Assembly: GCF_001194135.2 (NCBI RefSeq)
Contig: NC_068986.1
Coordinates: 8,696,459-8,760,458 of the forward strand
Direction of reading: 5' to 3'
Source: Octopus bimaculoides
Taxonomy: Eukaryota
Length of the DNA: 64,000 nt
The translations under genes and the position numbers were made by a program. Under the pieces are notes generated by a model. The model was not told the origin of the DNA. It saw nothing but the letters and a program-made list of their open reading frames with translations, and did no database searches. Below, in pieces: positions 7,340 through 47,303 of this stretch. Position 1 is the stretch's first letter. Each line of letters opens with the position of its first letter.

Positions 7340-8101
7340 ACGGTGAACAAGATGTGAAATCTGAAGAGGGTGAGAATAAAGACGGTAAAGGAGAGATGTC
7401 GGCCCAGAAGCGCTCATTTCCTTGGAATGGTGAAAATGGTCGTCCGTCAAACAAAAAAAAAAAAGCTCATGGTCCTACCCTTCCCAAGAATGCATTAATG
7501 CAACTCAATGAAATTAAACCGGGTTTGGAATTTCAGTTAATGGGTCAAAGTGGACCTGTTCATGCTCCAACATTTAACATGAAAGTGGAGGTGAATGGTG
7601 AAATCTTTGAAGGAGCCGGTCCAACCAAAAAGAAAGCCAAACTTCAGGCTGCTGAAAAAGCTCTGAGATCTTTTGTTCAGTTCCGTAATGCATCCGAAGC
7701 ATATCAGGCAATGGGCAAAAAAGTAAATTCGTTAGATTTTACATCAGATACGGCAGATATCGGTACTTTTATTAATGATTTTGAAGACAAAGTAGAAGGG
7801 GAGAATAACGAAGTAGCACAAGGGGTCTCCAAAGCCAATGGCTCCCATACAAACCAGAAAGCTACATTAACACCCCAGCCTGCAGGTAAAAACCCTGTGA
7901 TGATTTTGAACGAGTTAAGGCCGGGCTCAAAGTATGAATTTGTTTCTGAATCAGGTGAGAGCCATACGAAAACATTTGTGATGCAGATTACAGTGGATGG
8001 CATTGATTTTGAAGGTACTGGCCGCAATAAGAAGCAAGCGAAAGCAAGAGCTGCTCAGGCAGCCCTTGCACAGGTTTTCAATATGCAACTCTTCCCACCT
8101 G
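7340..8101 (+). CDS. ADAR2: ADAR2-type double-stranded RNA-specific adenosine deaminase, internal coding exon (NLS, dsRBD1, dsRBD2)
   Basis: Acceptor ttttcttttcattattcAG at 7338-7339 and donor G|GTAAGT at 8102; 762 nt, phase 1 at both ends. Translation has [14 protein letters not shown]...GPVHAP...[18 protein letters not shown] and [14 protein letters not shown]...SGESH...[18 protein letters not shown], near-identical to vertebrate ADAR2 dsRBD1/2. Confidence 0.97.
7408..7464 (+). other. Bipartite NLS-like motif KR-x(13)-KKKK
   Basis: [19 protein letters not shown] lies just before dsRBD1, the same position as the basic NLS of mammalian ADAR2. Confidence 0.7.
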
Positions 8102-8331
8102 GTAAGTACCTTGATGAGTCATCTCTTTTAATTTTTGTTTATGACTGACAATTCGACTTAATGATCTTCCTGAAATCCCTTTAATATTTTCCAACTACAT
8201 TTGTTGATGATCATAAGAACTTCTAATGTAAAGACTTGATATTTCAAATGTTAGTTTATGTTGTAGCTATTAACCCTTTCACCGGTATCTACATGTGTGT
8301 GTGTGTATGTGTGCATGCACAAACTCACTCA

Positions 8332-8382
<51 letters not shown>

Positions 8383-8547
8383 CACACATACATTTAGGTA
8401 TGAATACTATATGTATGCAAATATATATTTGTGTATATATGTATGTATATTTCTGTATATGCATTATATATATATTTATATATACACACACAGGTGTGCC
8501 CATAAACACACACACACATACACTTACACTATATATGCACATATATG

Positions 8548-8626
<79 letters not shown>

Positions 8627-8775
8627 TTAAATGTATAAATATGTTGGTATGTATATATATTTGTTTATACATCTATAATATTAGTGTTTGTGTATTTTTT
8701 GTGTGTGTGTGTGTGTGTATATATATGTGTGTGTGTGTGAGAGATAGATATATAAAAACCTGTAGTATGTGTGTT

Positions 8776-8810
<35 letters not shown>

Positions 8811-8989
8811 TTCTGTGTTTGTGTTTGTGTTTGTGTGTGTGTGTGCAGGGAATGGCATTGAATATTTTGGTGACCTTTTGCTTGCGCTTGAGGTCATGGT
8901 GTTCCTGTATTGCTGAGTTTATGATCCTTATTGGCACTGGATATCTTGCCCTGAATTATCCCAGGATCATGCCTGCAGGGTGGGAGAGG

Positions 8990-9300
8990 GTCTGCGAGGT
9001 CTTGTGCAATCATCAGCATGGCAACCATCTGATGCCTAGTTGAGTTGGAGGATGCCACAGCGTGCATGGAAACTGGACATGAACCCAGAGGAAACCAACT
9101 GCTGGTGCAATGACCTCATGCATGGGCATTTTACATGGGCAATGGTCAGTAATGGTCTTCCTCGGTTACAAGTGGACAGCCATCATCAATCCATAGAAGT
9201 GAAGCCAAATGATATGTGGAGCTCACCAAGGGTGGTTACTCTGCTTGTGATGACCTGTCCAACCCATGTCAGCTTGGAAAACAGCTGGGAAATGATGTTA
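8990..9300 (+). mobile_element. Degenerate LINE/SINE 3' end sharing the family C tail
   Basis: Ends in tgtccaacccatgtcagcttggaaaac...aatgatg, like the family C tail; upstream coding remnants are ambiguous. Confidence 0.35.
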
Positions 9301-9434
9301 CGTGTGTATGGATGTATGTTATATGTGTATGTTATGTATGTATATATAGATATAGGTATGTATGCATGGATATATGTATAGATAAGTATATATATGTATG
9401 TACATAATGCATATATTTGTTAGTAGATATATTG

Positions 9435-44092: not shown

Positions 44093-44146
<54 letters not shown>

Positions 44147-44586
44147 AGGGTGTATATAATTATATATAGACAGAAGAATTTCTAGATGGATAAATAGATG
44201 CATACAGACACAAACATATTCTTACACACATGCATACATTTGCACAGCAATGCATTAATGTTAGTAGGTTTATATGTTTGTGTGTGTTGTGAAGCAGTAA
44301 ATCTTTCATGTCACTGAAATATTGTTGATAAACTCATAAATCCGCTTTTAGCTTTGAAAATAATCTAAATTGACACATATTCTTTGATAAAAACTCTTTT
44401 ACATATTGTTGCTTCAGTTTTGTTTAGATTTCCCTTTGTTGTTGTTGTTGTTGCTGTTATTGTTGTTATTTTTTATTGTATTGTTGTTATTGTGTAAAAT
44501 AAAAATTAAAAAAAAAAAACACCATTTAAATTTTATATAGAATCATCTTGAATACTGATAAAAGTTTCCTGTTTGTCAATTTGTAG

Positions 44587-45255
44587 GACTGCAACCAGTC
44601 CCAAAGGATGGTGCTGAAGAAAGTTCGAAAGTGTTAGCTGATATTATTGCCAAAGTTGTTCATGAAAAATTTGCTGAACTGACTGATAATTATTCCAGTC
44701 AGTATTCTCGCAGAAAAGTTCTTGCTGGTATTGTGATGACAAGTGGAGCAGATGGTCACGGGGCTTCTGTTATTGGAATTGGAACTGGTACCAAATGTAT
44801 TAATGGAGAATATATGAGTGACAGAGGGTTTGGTGTCAATGATTGCCATGCCGAGATCATAGCCCGCCGTTGTTTCCTTCGCTACATCTACGACCAGCTG
44901 GAGTTGCATCTTTCTGACAACTCAGATGTATGTAATTCTTCAATATTTGAACTTCGAGATAAAGGAGGTTATCAACTTAAAGAAAACATCCAGTTCCATC
45001 TATATATAAGCACTGCTCCTTGCGGTGATGCCCGCATCTTCTCTCCGCATGGCCAGGATGTTGAAACAGGTGACAGACATCCAAATCGCAAAGCTCGAGG
45101 TCAATTAAGAACCAAGATCGAATCTGGAGAAGGAACAATTCCTGTCCGAACGTCTGGTGTTATTCAAACATGGGATGGTGTTTTGGAGGGTGAGCGTTTA
45201 CTTACAATGTCTTGCAGTGACAAGATAGCAAGATGGAATGTCCTTGGAATTCAAG
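44587..45255 (+). CDS. ADAR2: ADAR2 deaminase domain, catalytic exon
   Basis: Acceptor tttgtcaatttgtAG at 44585-44586 and donor G|GTAAGG at 45256; 669 nt, phase 1/1. Joins exon 7340-8101 in frame (MQLFPP-G-LQPVPKDG). Motifs TGTKC, DCHAE (H 44847-49, E 44853-55), PCGDARIFSPH (C 45021-23), KIESGEGT (flipping-loop E 45129-31), MSCSDKIARW (C 45213-15, K 45222-24). Confidence 0.98.
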
Positions 45256-45782
45256 GTAAGGGGTTCAATTCCAATCCGAATACTTTCTTTTCTATTTTCA
45301 ATTTTCACTCAATTAATGGATAGTTGAATAATTTCCCCATAAAACTTCTATAGAAACTGATATGGTCAGTTGAAGGTTTTTGGTAGCCATTTTTTTTACT
45401 ACTGTATTAATCTAGTTTTGTTAATTATCTAATCTCTCTAATGAACCAACTTTCTCAAAATTATGACAAAAAAAAAAAAAATTAAATTTTGATTAAGGTT
45501 GTGTGTCAGTGTTTTTATAAATTTTAAAAATTAATAGCTTCGTCTCATTAAAAAAAATTCTCTTTAAATGTAAATTTTGTTGGAAAAGATTCGTGCTTCT
45601 GATTTGTAGGACTAGAAATGTAATTTAGCAACATAACTCCATGCTTTATTAAATACCCCTTCACTTTTCCATGCTACCTTACTTGGAAACAGGTGAAGGT
45701 TGGTGATAGGATGGACATCCAGCCATAGAAAATCTGTTTCAAGAAATTTCATCCAACACATGCAGGCATGGGAAAGCGGACA

Positions 45783-45986
45783 TTAACCCTTTCAATACCA
45801 ACCCGGCTGAAACTGGCTCTGTAGTACAAATGTCTTGTTTTCATAAGTTTTGAATTAAAATCTTCCACCAAACCTTAGTCACAATTTATGTTCCTAACAC
45901 TAACTTAATGATAACTGAGTTATATTTAAAGTAATTGAAAGAAATACAGAGCATCTCAAAATAAATAACAGTAATGAAAGGGTTAA
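45783..45986. mobile_element. piggyBac-type MITE, same family as 29133-29361, opposite orientation
   Basis: TTAA 45783-86, ccctttc...gaaaggg, TTAA 45983-86; sits in a SINE tail (gcggaca-TTAA-aataacgatgatg). Confidence 0.9.
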
Positions 45987-46351
45987 AATAACGATGATGT
46001 GGGGGCATGGTTGGTTGTAAGACTGGGATAGGATTAGCAACAAGTAAGGCATCCAGTTGTAAAAGAAGGCCCTCATATGGCCCATGCTAGCATGGAAAAG
46101 GAATGAATGTGTGTGTGTGTGTGTGTGTGTGTCTGTGTGTGTGTGTGTGTGTGTATACACACATGTATGTAAACTCCCACACACTTGACATGAAAGTGTT
46201 TTTTGAGCAAGGTAAACTTTGGTCATTTATGAATCTCTATGATAAATCTGGTCAGCCTCATCCAAGCCCTGACTTCAAAAGATCTGATGATTTATTTTCA
46301 TGAATGTCATTGGCAAAAACAAATTGCTTTTTGTTGTTTTTTCATCTCTTC

Positions 46352-46573
46352 TTAACCTTTTTATGATACCAACCTGCCTGACACCACCCTTGGGCTTATG
46401 ATACAAACTTCTTGTTTTAAAGTGAACTAAATTGAAATCTTCCATCAAAATTTTGTTAAATTGTTGCAAACACTACTTTTGTTTGGCAGTTATTTTAAAA
46501 AATTCTTTATTATTTTTCAAAATTAATTGAAACAGAATAAATTTCAATAGAAATATAGTAACAAAAGGCCTAA
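46352..46573. mobile_element. Degenerate related TTAA MITE
   Basis: ttaacctttttatgatacc...gtaacaaaaggcctaa. Confidence 0.55.
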
Positions 46574-46740
46574 ACTGAATGGATGATGTTATAACTGATT
46601 TTAGATAACTATTTTTCTGACAGTTTTATATGCAGTTTTTCTCACTCAGCAACCTTATATTAAATTTGAAAGTTTTTTTTATAATAGATATTTGCATTTG
46701 TTTTGGTTTATTAAATTAGTTTTATCTTTTTGAATTTCAG

Positions 46741-47303
46741 GATCGTTGCTGAGCCATTTTATGAACCCCATATACCTCGAAAGTATTATTCTGGGTAGCT
46801 TATACCACAGTGATCATTTATCACGAGCCATGTATTCCCGTATCTCTATAATAGAGAATCTTCCGGAACCTTTCCATTTAAACCGCCCTTTCCTCAGTGG
46901 TATCAGTAGTCCCGAGAGCCGGCAGCCTGGGAAAGCACCAAATTTTGGCATCAATTGGCGGAAAGAGGATGACACATTTGAAGTGATCAATGCTATGACA
47001 GGTCGAGTTGAAGGTGGTAGTGTGTCAAGAATCTGTAAGCAAGCTTTATTCAGTCGCTTTATGAATTTATATGGTAAGCTGTCTTCATTGACTGGTCAGT
47101 CTGTGACCACTCGTCCAACCCATTACTCTGATGCTAAAGCTGCTGTAATGGAATACCAGTTGGCCAAGCAATGTGTATTTCAAGCATTCCAGAAGGCTGG
47201 TCTTGGCAATTGGGTCCAGAAACCAATAGAACAAGATCAATTTGAAATGTCCACTGAGGCACCAGACATTCAAGTAAAGTCTTCAGGTGACGACTCTGCA
47301 TAA
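46741..47303 (+). CDS. ADAR2: ADAR2 deaminase domain, last coding exon with stop
   Basis: Acceptor ttttatctttttgaatttcAG at 46739-46740, phase 1 (IQG-SLLSHF). Encodes PIYLESIILGSLYH...RQPGKAPNF...AGLGNWVQKPIEQDQF; TAA at 47301-47303. Confidence 0.98.

What the first reader, a model, noticed from the sequence alone, without database searches (positions are those of the whole stretch)
7340..47303. Catalytically intact ADAR2 of a probable cephalopod: the editing enzyme locus itself
Seen: all Zn ligands, the catalytic Glu, the flipping-loop Glu and the IP6-contacting basic motifs (ARR, SDKIAR, WVQK) are present in an uninterrupted spliced frame. Established: coleoid cephalopods recode mRNA by A-to-I editing at exceptional levels, and ADARs self-edit in mammals, Drosophila and squid. 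Inference: regulatory features of this locus may bear on that high editing.
Basis: partly seen in the sequence, partly recalled or inferred. Interest (0 to 1): 0.7.

Follow-up and report, generated by a model that had tools for sequence, protein, structure and literature searches.

The report
Octopus ADAR2 gene, already annotated
The interval holds the last three coding exons of the already-annotated, catalytically intact ADAR2 RNA-editing enzyme gene of Octopus bimaculoides; the only new point is that its big intron carries a deeply conserved stop-codon-containing ("poison") exon, preceded by conserved RNA hairpins and hidden in an assembly gap.

Summary

- **Identity.** Exons 7340-8101, 44587-45255 and 46741-47303 splice into a product that, from the ATG at 7396, matches RefSeq XP_014770575.2 (O. 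bimaculoides "double-stranded RNA-specific editase 1") at 645/645 residues. It has two dsRBDs plus an A_deamin domain, and is 88% identical to characterised squid sqADAR2.
- **Catalytic residues.** The Zn ligands, catalytic Glu, flipping-loop Glu and 17 of 18 IP6 contacts are conserved.
- **Assembly gaps.** All gaps flagged in the finding lie in the 36.5-kb intron. No constitutive coding exon is missing: the product is collinear with human ADAR2, and gap-free Argonauta hians has the same three exons.
- **What the window lacks.** The upstream exons, including the optional third dsRBD, are outside it.

One thing is new. An O. bimaculoides RNA-seq contig splices 8101 to a 186-nt cassette exon and then to 44587. 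That cassette is absent from the readable window and lies in gap 10827-11672. It carries in-frame stops, so the product would have dsRBDs only. It is conserved in Argonauta and Sepia. Conserved hairpins at 10410-10800 sit just upstream of it; two are supported by sequence and stability, and the first is about 50 bp and weakly mir-31-like. A second conserved truncating exon starts at 18046. Their function, possibly autoregulation, is inferred and untested.

The parts
6689..6800 (+). Possible alternative first exon (ORF MLITAEKWLEHFGITVIYKCFYPLNNL...), with a putative donor TTGT|GTACTT at 6800/6801
   Evidence: It matches the N-terminus of the predicted O. sinensis isoform X3 (P0131). It is not conserved in Argonauta. 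This is a prediction only.
7340..8101 (+). Coding exon of 762 nt, equivalent to squid ADAR2 exon 3. It encodes dsRBD1 (about 7471-7683) and dsRBD2 (about 7879-8091). The RefSeq start codon is at 7396-7398.
   Evidence: Transcript L005 uses both exon boundaries.
8102..44586 (+). Intron of 36,485 nt with 4,924 N. It contains every gap flagged in the finding plus four more (32467-32702, 34073-34859, 39654-39733, 42907-43030). It is rich in interspersed repeats in both orientations.
   Evidence: The equivalent Argonauta intron is 22.5 kb and has no gaps.
10410..10565 (+). Conserved hairpin H1, an imperfect duplex of about 50 bp
   Evidence: It is 82% identical to Sepia over 170 nt. The stem is invariant or changes only GU<->AU/GC, and the apical loop is full of indels. 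MFE is -56 to -60 kcal/mol with z of -5 to -8, and the sense strand is more stable than the antisense strand. The best Rfam match is mir-31 at 30-33.5 bits, below the gathering score of 51.
10570..10800 (+). Hairpins H2 (octopod-level only) and H3. The H3 core of about 19 bp is conserved in all three species. The 5' arm of H3 shares AGTGGCAAA(A/G)TG with H1.
10800..10826 (+). Start of the polypyrimidine tract of the poison exon's 3' splice site, cut off by the gap
   Evidence: Alignment with Argonauta (...TTTTTTTTGCTGTTCTCCAG|AGAATGAG) and Sepia.
10827..11672 (+). Assembly gap that hides a 186-nt PTC-containing cassette ('poison') exon: AGAATGAGCAATCCCGGAATTGA...CACTTGTGCAG, read as ...FPP|ENEQSRN*
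   Evidence: Transcript L005 positions 911-1096 lie between window 8101 and 44587 and have no match in the readable window. Orthologous exons with conserved AG and GT sites are at Argonauta L002 60919-61126 and Sepia L003 12063-12256, with stops in all frames.
18046..18165 (+). Second conserved alternative exon (CNE2), with acceptor CCCTTATTTCAG|ATC. Read from the exon-3 phase it gives DLDEEIWSK*.
   Evidence: It is 79% identical to Argonauta over 167 nt. Its Sepia homologue is used as an alternative terminal exon in spliced transcripts L004 and L006 and in gene model CAE1178143.1. Its use in Octopus is not shown.
44587..45255 (+). Coding exon of 669 nt covering the N-terminal part of the deaminase domain, with H323, E325, C381, E417 and C445
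45256..46740 (+). Intron of 1,485 nt with no gaps. Outside the splice-site margins it is not conserved with Argonauta.
46741..47303 (+). Last coding exon, covering the C-terminal part of the deaminase domain (IP6 motif WVQK at 47211-47222) and the stop TAA at 47301-47303
47304..47423 (+). Start of the 3' UTR, conserved with Argonauta. ATTAAA at 47366 is the first poly(A)-signal-like hexamer.

Best explanation
Window 7340-47303 is the 3' part (coding exons 3, 4 and 5 in the published squid numbering) of the single ADAR2 (ADARB1-type) gene of Octopus bimaculoides. It encodes dsRBD1, dsRBD2 and a complete, catalytically competent adenosine-deaminase domain.

The enzyme should work as other ADAR2s do. 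The dsRBDs bind duplex RNA. The flipping-loop Glu (E417) takes the place of the flipped-out adenosine. A Zn-bound water (H323, C381, C445), with E325 as proton shuttle, deaminates A to I. A buried IP6 held by conserved Lys/Arg/Trp residues stabilises the fold. These mechanistic steps are inferred from residue conservation and the solved human ADAR2 structures; they were not assayed here.

The gene is already annotated, and its squid orthologue has been characterised biochemically.

The 36.5-kb intron between the dsRBD exon and the deaminase exon also carries two coleoid-conserved alternative exons. Each ends the reading frame before the deaminase domain:
- A 186-nt poison cassette, hidden in gap 10827-11672 and preceded by conserved hairpins.
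- An alternative terminal exon starting at 18046.

These most likely tune the output of full-length ADAR2, through NMD or through dsRBD-only proteins. That last step is inference.
For: - **Identity to RefSeq.** 645/645 identical to XP_014770575.2.
- **Source.** The window equals CM046606.1 of assembly GCA_001194135.2.
- **Domains.** Pfam finds A_deamin and 2 x dsrm.
- **Human ADAR2.** The dsRBD2-deaminase structure 6vff matches at E=1.6e-203 and is collinear across both junctions, with only 1-residue indels.
- **Catalytic and IP6 residues.** All are conserved except E689Q.
- **Squid orthologue.** 88% identical to sqADAR2. The published squid architecture matches: exon 3 holds the two dsRBMs, exons 4 and 5 hold the deaminase domain, and the introns are large. 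PMC10278661 also reports sqADAR2 as previously cloned and characterised.
- **Argonauta.** The gap-free locus has the same exon arrangement.
- **Poison exon.**
  - Spliced O. bimaculoides transcript L005 contains it.
  - Its sequence, splice sites and stop codons are conserved in Argonauta and Sepia.
  - It is single-copy.
- **Alternative terminal exon.** Sepia transcripts L004 and L006 use it.
Against: - No enzymatic assay and no O. bimaculoides read-level data were available here.
- No transcript retrieved here shows the direct 8101->44587 junction or the 45255->46741 junction in this species. Both rest on the RefSeq model and on orthologues.
- The window lacks the 5' exons, so the true N-terminus is not defined. 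Isoforms of 677-785 aa exist in O. vulgaris and O. sinensis.
- The poison-exon isoform is known from a single assembled contig. Its abundance, its NMD sensitivity and any regulatory role are unknown.
- Use of the 18046 exon in Octopus is not shown.
Confidence: 0.96

Rival explanations
1. The hairpins upstream of the poison exon are a dsRNA sensor for ADAR2 itself. ADAR2 binding or editing of H1-H3 changes use of the adjacent 3' splice site or branch point. High ADAR2 therefore raises inclusion of the stop-containing cassette and lowers output of full-length ADAR2. This would be negative feedback, functionally like the self-editing loop of rodent Adarb1.
For: - H1 (about 50 bp) and the H3 core (19 bp) are conserved from octopus to cuttlefish, more strongly than the neighbouring coding DNA: 82% against 77.8% identity to Sepia.
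- Many G-U pairs make the structure sense-strand specific.
- H3 ends about 48-65 nt upstream of the cassette's AG, where a branch point is expected.
- The host gene encodes a dsRNA-binding editor.
- There is a mammalian precedent for ADAR2 autoregulation through an intronic duplex and alternative splicing (PMC9479739).
Against: - No editing was observed. The only transcript-versus-genome mismatch is G->A.
- The cassette's acceptor is a genome-encoded AG, so editing is not needed to create it.
- The stems have no A-C mismatches.
- Near-total sequence invariance of both arms, with almost no compensatory changes, fits a sequence-specific reader or a miRNA as well as it fits a generic duplex.
- Only three species were compared.
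Confidence: 0.25
2. H1, and perhaps H3, is an intronic pri-miRNA: a diverged mir-31-family or coleoid-specific miRNA hosted in ADAR2. The conservation then reflects the mature miRNA. Its position next to the poison exon is either incidental or reflects competition between the Microprocessor and splicing.
For: - mir-31 (RF00661) is the top Rfam match for H1 in all three species and on the + strand only. Scores are 29.8-33.5 bits, with E of 2e-5 to 2e-4 for those small searches.
- The 5' arm GGCAAAAUGUUGGAAGAGCAA matches the consensus mature sequence at 16 of 21 positions.
- Both arms are invariant and the loop is variable, which is the usual miRNA pattern.
- H1 and H3 share an arm motif, as paralogues in a miRNA cluster do.
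Against: - All scores are well below the gathering score of 51. No hit appears at gathering threshold on the whole window.
- Other unrelated miRNA models score 20-27 bits on the same hairpin, so much of the score comes from generic hairpin shape.
- The stem is about 50-55 bp, not about 35 bp.
- There is one mismatch inside the seed, whereas true mir-31 orthologues are nearly invariant.
- The sequences were not found in the held text of the octopus miRNA paper's supplements, which are incomplete, or in the full-text library.
Confidence: 0.2
3. The assembly gaps hide a constitutive coding exon or a misjoin, so the three-exon model is not the real full-length mRNA.
For: - 13% of the intron is N.
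- One gap does hide an expressed exon.
Against: - The spliced product aligns to human ADAR2 without any missing segment across both junctions.
- Gap-free Argonauta has the same exons and nothing coding in between.
- Squid cDNA-derived proteins read ...FPPGLQPVPKDG... straight through.
- The hidden exon carries stops in all frames.
Confidence: 0.02
4. The protein is an inactive or differently classed family member (ADAR1, ADAR3-like, or ADAD/ADAR-D-like) and not an active ADAR2.
For: Coleoids have three ADAR-family genes, one of them catalytically inactive (PMC10278661).
Against: - All catalytic residues are intact.
- It has two dsRBDs and no other Pfam domain.
- It scores 564 bits against human ADAR2 and 340 bits against human ADAR1 over the same deaminase region.
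- It is 88% identical to sqADAR2.
Confidence: 0.01

Closest known systems
Squid sqADAR2a/b (Doryteuthis opalescens ACO52474/ACO52475; D. pealeii gene architecture in PMC10278661)
   Same: - 88% protein identity.
- Same exon plan: one exon for dsRBM2 and dsRBM3, two exons for the deaminase domain, and very large introns.
- Same Q at the position of human E689.
   Different: The window holds only the last three coding exons. The optional extra N-terminal dsRBD exon, present in 784-787-aa isoforms of O. vulgaris, O. sinensis and Argonauta, is not in the window. The poison cassette and hairpins do not appear in the passages of that paper returned by my term search (intron, exon, splice variant, truncated); I did not read it in full.
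Human ADAR2 / ADARB1 (PDB 1ZY7, 5HP2, 6VFF)
   Same: - 66% identity over dsRBD2 plus the deaminase domain.
- Zn ligands, E396, E488, 17 of 18 IP6 contacts and the checked RNA-contact residues are identical.
   Different: - E689 is Q.
- Gene structure is far more compact in exon number: three exons here for a region that, from memory, is split over many more in human.
Rodent Adarb1 autoregulation (self-editing creates a 3' splice site, inserts 47 nt, and gives a non-functional product; Rueter 1999 and Feng 2006 as cited in PMC9479739)
   Same: An alternative splicing event in ADAR2's own pre-mRNA destroys the reading frame, and it is associated with an intronic dsRNA structure near the alternative 3' splice site.
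   Different: - Different intron: here between dsRBD2 and the deaminase domain.
- Here it is a whole cassette exon with genome-encoded AG and GT sites.
- No editing dependence is shown.
- There is no sequence homology, so the two would be independent inventions.
Conserved autoregulatory poison exons of RNA-binding proteins (SR proteins, RBM39, SMNDC1; PMC11357089, PMC10477243, PMC6547761)
   Same: - A stop-containing cassette exon.
- Exon and flanking intron are conserved as well as, or better than, coding sequence over hundreds of millions of years.
- The host gene encodes an RNA-binding protein.
   Different: NMD coupling and self-regulation were not tested here. The flanking conserved element is long dsRNA rather than single-stranded binding motifs.
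mir-31 precursor family (Rfam RF00661)
   Same: H1 has the hairpin shape, and 16 of 21 positions of its 5' arm match the consensus mature sequence. mir-31 is the top Rfam match in three species.
   Different: - Scores of 30-33 bits against a gathering score of 51.
- The seed differs at one position.
- The stem is about 20 bp too long.
- No small-RNA evidence.

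Membership tests
ADAR2 (ADARB1-type dsRNA adenosine deaminase) | C-terminal adenosine-deaminase (editase) domain | tested here: met
   Pfam PF02137 at E=7.7e-116, covering 2-329 of 329 profile positions.
ADAR2 (ADARB1-type dsRNA adenosine deaminase) | Two N-terminal dsRBDs and no Z-alpha domain | tested here: met
   Pfam finds dsrm x2. PDB dsRBD1 (2b7t) matches residues 40-110 and dsRBD2 (2b7v) matches residues 176-246. No other Pfam domain was found. The upstream exons are outside the window, and orthologues add only a third dsRBD there.
ADAR2 (ADARB1-type dsRNA adenosine deaminase) | Zn ligands His/Cys/Cys and the catalytic Glu (hADAR2 H394, C451, C516, E396) | tested here: met
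   H323, C381, C445 and E325.
ADAR2 (ADARB1-type dsRNA adenosine deaminase) | Base-flipping loop Glu (hADAR2 E488) in the SGEG motif | tested here: met
   S415-G416-E417-G418.
ADAR2 (ADARB1-type dsRNA adenosine deaminase) | IP6-coordinating residues | tested here: met
   17 of 18 checked positions are identical, and E689 is Q618. The residue list comes from my memory of Macbeth et al. 2005.
ADAR2 (ADARB1-type dsRNA adenosine deaminase) | Closer to ADAR2 than to ADAR1 or ADAD | tested here: met
   564 bits against hADAR2 and 340 bits against hADAR1 over the same region. Every named entry among the top 120 relatives is an ADARB1-type editase. 88% identical to sqADAR2. No explicit tree with coleoid ADAR1 and ADAR/D-like proteins was built.
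ADAR2 (ADARB1-type dsRNA adenosine deaminase) | A-to-I deaminase activity on dsRNA | not testable with these tools
   PMC10278661 describes the squid orthologue as previously cloned and characterised, citing Palavicini et al. 2009 and 2012. That those earlier papers showed activity is from my memory of them. This protein was not assayed.
Autoregulatory poison exon (alternative splicing coupled to NMD) | Alternative cassette exon that introduces a premature stop | tested here: met
   The 186-nt cassette in transcript L005 reads ...FPP|ENEQSRN*. Stops occur in every frame in all three species.
Autoregulatory poison exon (alternative splicing coupled to NMD) | Deep conservation of the exon and its flanks | tested here: met
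   Conserved across Octopus, Argonauta and Sepia, including splice sites. Apart from the second alternative exon at 18007-18165 and a 38-nt match at 36782-36819, it is the only collinear conserved island in the intron.
Autoregulatory poison exon (alternative splicing coupled to NMD) | The isoform is degraded by NMD, and inclusion responds to the gene's own protein | not testable with these tools
   This needs NMD inhibition and ADAR2 dosage experiments.
microRNA precursor (mir-31 family) | Reaches the Rfam gathering score | tested here: not met
   29.8-33.5 bits against a gathering score of 51. No hit at gathering threshold.
microRNA precursor (mir-31 family) | Drosha/Dicer-type small RNAs of about 22 nt from the arms | not testable with these tools
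   No small-RNA data were available. Text searches for the arm sequences found nothing.

The most novel reading that the evidence does not exclude
Coleoid cephalopods control their main recoding enzyme through a module not described in the papers I could search. A poison exon conserved across octopods and cuttlefish lies between the dsRBD exon and the deaminase exon of ADAR2. Its 3' splice site is preceded by long conserved dsRNA hairpins that ADAR2 itself binds or edits. The result would be a homeostatic feedback loop that arose independently of the rodent self-editing loop. A variant reading is that H1 is a mir-31-like hairpin whose seed would become the canonical GGCAAGA after A-to-I editing at one position.
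Probability: 0.25. Interest if true: 0.7.

Novelty: already known. Interest (0 to 1): 0.3.

Why it matters
As submitted, the finding rediscovers an annotated gene. It adds nothing beyond confirming that the O. bimaculoides ADAR2 model is sound despite the gaps.

The by-product is more useful. How coleoids set and hold their very high ADAR2-dependent recoding is an open question. A conserved poison exon with adjacent dsRNA hairpins inside ADAR2 gives a concrete element that can be tested with minigenes or CRISPR.

It also shows that the current O. bimaculoides assembly hides a transcribed, conserved exon of this gene in a gap. Isoform and editing analyses mapped to this reference will therefore miss it.

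Tried and rejected
- **Inverted-repeat search.** The repeat finder on the intron returned only N-versus-N and microsatellite artefacts. A masked self-BLAST showed ordinary interspersed repeats in both orientations, for example 32050-32361 against 39226-39534 at 83%. This is not specific to this gene.
- **Rfam at gathering threshold.** Nothing was found on the whole window.
- **Search for the hairpin arm sequences.** Nothing was found in the held supplements of the octopus miRNA paper (PMC9699675), which are truncated and mostly k-mer tables, or in the full-text library.
- **Extra N-terminal dsRBD exon and the 5' exon of transcript L005.** Neither is in the window or in the 2.6 kb further upstream.
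- **Loci that could not be fetched.** The O. vulgaris locus and the outgroup mollusc loci (Haliotis, Patella, Ylistrum) were unavailable because the gene ranges exceed 100 kb or no record exists. I therefore could not test whether the cassette and hairpins are coleoid-specific.
- **Editable in-frame insert.** Rejected. Cassette lengths are 186, 208 and 194 nt, so the frame is not preserved across species, and stops occur in all frames.
- **Self-editing.** The only exon mismatch between the RNA contig and the genome is G7446->A, which is synonymous and not an A-to-I signature. Consensus contigs cannot show partial editing.
- **Other genes in the window.** Pfam scans of ten other ORFs found nothing.
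- **Canonical miR-31.** It is not in the window at 3 or fewer mismatches.

Full report
**What the window is**

The window is 64 kb at 37% G+C, rich in microsatellites, with 18 runs of N. Over all 57,303 overlapping bases it is identical to Octopus bimaculoides chromosome CM046606.1 of assembly GCA_001194135.2, around 8.70-8.75 Mb.

**The observation**

Three long ORFs stand out at 7354-8148, 44631-45323 and 46746-47303. The splice sites are canonical:
- Acceptor AG|AC at 7339/7340, phase 1.
- Donor G|GTAAGT at 8101/8102.
- Acceptor AG|GA at 44586/44587.
- Donor G|GTAAGG at 45255/45256.
- Acceptor AG|GA at 46740/46741.
- Stop TAA at 47301-47303.

The real frame is the one containing ATG 7396, because the exon begins in phase 1.

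From that ATG the spliced product is 645/645 identical to RefSeq XP_014770575.2, [quoted passage not shown]. So the protein is already in the databases.

**Family assignment**

Pfam finds A_deamin (7.7e-116, full length) and two dsrm domains.

Against solved structures, these are the main matches:

| Structure | Score |
|---|---|
| Human ADAR2 dsRBD2-deaminase (6vff) | E=1.6e-203 |
| ADAR2 deaminase domain alone (1zy7) | 564 bits |
| Human ADAR1 deaminase, same region (9b83) | 340 bits |
| C. elegans ADR-2 (8zen) | 200 bits |

Every named entry among the best 120 database relatives is an ADARB1-type editase. The closest are:
- O. vulgaris / O. sinensis, 98% identical.
- A squid-type cluster, 88% identical, which contains the cDNA-derived Doryteuthis opalescens sqADAR2a and sqADAR2b.

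Mapping to hADAR2 numbering shows that all catalytic residues are present:

| hADAR2 | Octopus |
|---|---|
| H394 | H323 |
| E396 | E325 |
| C451 | C381 |
| C516 | C445 |
| E488 | E417 |

Of the 18 IP6 contacts I checked, 17 are identical and E689 is Q618, as it is in squid. The IP6 residue list is from my memory of Macbeth et al. 2005.

The mechanism can be taken over from the human ADAR2 structures by inference.

**The gaps**

All six gaps flagged in the finding, and four more, lie inside the 36,485-nt intron 8102-44586, which holds 4,924 N. Three lines of evidence show that no constitutive coding exon is hidden there:
- The spliced protein is collinear with human ADAR2 across both junctions (...FPPG|LQPVPKDG......GIQ|GSLL...) with only single-residue indels.
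- Squid cDNA-derived proteins read straight through the same points.
- The gap-free Argonauta hians locus (L002, 0 N) has the same three exons, separated by a 22.5-kb intron and a short intron.

This matches the published squid gene architecture: five coding exons, an optional dsRBM in exon 2, two dsRBMs in exon 3, the deaminase domain in exons 4 and 5, and very large introns (PMC10278661).

The window therefore contains exons 3-5 only. The optional extra dsRBD, present in 784-787-aa isoforms of O. vulgaris, O. sinensis and Argonauta, is not in the window. In Argonauta it lies 31 kb upstream, and the O. vulgaris gene spans 115 kb.

**What the gaps do hide**

Comparing the window with Argonauta gave only three collinear conserved islands outside the exons:
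- 10411-10826, 78% identical over 438 nt and running straight into the gap at 10827.
- 18007-18165, 79% identical.
- A 38-nt match at 36782-36819, not followed up.

The first island is also conserved in the cuttlefish Sepia pharaonis (L003). There, 170 nt are 82% identical to octopus, more than the adjacent coding exon at 77.8%. In Argonauta and Sepia the conservation continues for about 300 nt beyond the point where the octopus sequence turns into N.

A Logan RNA-seq contig from O. bimaculoides (L005, SRR32601320) explains this. It is 761/762 identical to the exon and is spliced as follows:
- An upstream exon, not in the window.
- Window 7340-8101.
- A 186-nt cassette.
- Window 44587 onward.

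The cassette has no match in the readable window. It is orthologous to Argonauta L002 60919-61126 (208 nt) and Sepia L003 12063-12256 (194 nt). Both share the conserved acceptor GCTGTTCTCCAG| and donor CAG|GTACT.

Read in frame, it terminates after ...FPP|ENEQSRN* in octopus, ENEQSWN* in Argonauta and KNEQSRIGLALRKTAGNL* in Sepia. All frames carry stops, and the lengths differ modulo 3. It is therefore a non-coding, stop-introducing ("poison") cassette exon, conserved between octopods and a cuttlefish. In this assembly it sits inside gap 10827-11672, and window 10800-10826 is the start of its polypyrimidine tract.

**The hairpins**

The readable part of the first island (10410-10800) folds into three hairpins.
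- **H1** is an imperfect duplex of about 50 bp. In three species every stem change keeps pairing (GU<->AU/GC), and the apical loop is full of indels. MFE is -56 to -60 kcal/mol with z of -5 to -8. The sense strand is 7-17 kcal/mol more stable than the antisense strand, so the structure belongs to the ADAR2 pre-mRNA strand.
- **H3** has a 19-bp core conserved in all three species. It ends 48-65 nt upstream of the cassette's AG. Its 5' arm shares AGTGGCAAA(A/G)TG with H1.
- **H2** is conserved only among octopods, and its predicted stability in O. bimaculoides is no better than shuffled sequence (z +0.4).

The element is single-copy.

In permissive Rfam searches H1's best match in every species is mir-31, at 29.8-33.5 bits and on the + strand only, with 16 of 21 positions of the mature consensus matching. 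These scores are far below the gathering score of 51. Unrelated miRNA models reach 20-27 bits on the same hairpin. The stem is about 20 bp longer than a typical Drosha substrate.

**The second island**

The second island begins with an invariant acceptor, TATTTCAG|ATC, and the exon starts at 18046. In Sepia this exon is used:
- Spliced transcript L004 is 100% identical to S. pharaonis.
- Spliced transcript L006 comes from another Sepia species and continues for more than 530 nt.
- Both join the dsRBD exon directly to this exon.
- Gene model CAE1178143.1 ends there, giving a 259-273-aa dsRBD-only product.

In all three species the frame closes inside this exon. I found no octopus transcript that uses it.

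**Interpretation**

These points are firmly shown:
- The gene's identity.
- An intact catalytic machinery.
- The exon structure.
- The existence and conservation of one expressed poison cassette and one alternative terminal exon.
- The conserved hairpins.

These points are inferred:
- That the alternative exons lower output of full-length ADAR2, through NMD or through dsRBD-only proteins.
- That the hairpins control cassette inclusion.

The attractive model is that ADAR2 itself reads the hairpins, giving a feedback loop analogous to rodent Adarb1 self-editing (PMC9479739). Its support is position, conservation and the nature of the host gene. I saw no editing, the acceptor is genome-encoded, and a miRNA or another sequence-specific reader fits the invariant arms equally well. 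I give that model about 0.25.

My searches of the literature found no description of a cephalopod ADAR2 poison exon or of these hairpins. That is absence in the library I could search, not proof of novelty.

**Verdict**

The finding as submitted is correct but already known: an annotated gene with a characterised orthologue and a published architecture. On its own it scores low.

The modest extra interest comes from the conserved, gap-hidden poison exon with its dsRNA hairpins. That gives a concrete and testable handle on ADAR2 regulation in coleoids.

Noticed in passing
window 10827-11672 (gap) and L005 911-1096: An expressed 186-nt alternative exon of ADAR2 is missing from the reference assembly because it falls in an N gap. 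RNA-seq analyses mapped to this assembly will not see it.
   Followed up: yes
window 10410-10800; L002 60488-60875; L003 11588-12040: Hairpins H1 and H3 share the arm motif GTGGCAAA(A/G)TG / CACTTTGC. In principle they could pair with each other's arms in an alternative, mutually exclusive structure. H1 is weakly mir-31-like, and one A-to-I change would restore the canonical seed GGCAAGA.
   Followed up: partly
window 18046-18165: A second conserved alternative exon closes the frame (DLDEEIWSK*). Its Sepia homologue is a real alternative terminal exon giving a dsRBD-only ADAR2. Its use in Octopus is unknown.
   Followed up: partly
window 6689-6800: An ORF matches the N-terminus of predicted O. 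sinensis isoform X3, so it may be an alternative first exon or promoter about 0.5 kb upstream of the dsRBD exon. It is not conserved in Argonauta.
   Followed up: partly
L005 1-148 (not in window): O. bimaculoides transcripts use an upstream exon (ORF MMLAYSRVPFTHAYHNAY...) identical to the N-terminus of O. vulgaris isoform X2. It lies outside the window. A weak homologue sits 8.3 kb upstream of the dsRBD exon in Argonauta (L002 49515-49645). The 645-aa RefSeq model may therefore lack 5' exons.
   Followed up: partly
window 7446: The only difference between the RNA contig and the genome in the exon is G (genome) against A (RNA). It is synonymous (CCG/CCA Pro), so it is a polymorphism and not an A-to-I edit.
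   Followed up: yes
window 23144-23534, 27793-27973, 32048-32373, 37719-37910, 39226-39534, 53104-53291: A SINE-like interspersed repeat (ORF motif LDALPNANHSESV.GAFTCHRHRCHL) occurs in both orientations within the big intron, for example 32050-32361 against 39226-39534 at 83% complementarity. It could form long intramolecular dsRNA in the pre-mRNA. This is typical of this repeat-rich genome.
   Followed up: partly
L003 11925-11990: In Sepia the apical part of hairpin H3 is replaced by a run of about 45 T followed by about 19 A, which would itself pair as an A-U duplex. The conserved 19-bp core is kept.
   Followed up: no
L002 1-4423 and the O. vulgaris locus: The upstream neighbour of ADAR2 on the opposite strand is an HRG-family gene (Pfam PF16954) in both Argonauta and O. 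vulgaris, so synteny is conserved. It lies outside the window.
   Followed up: no
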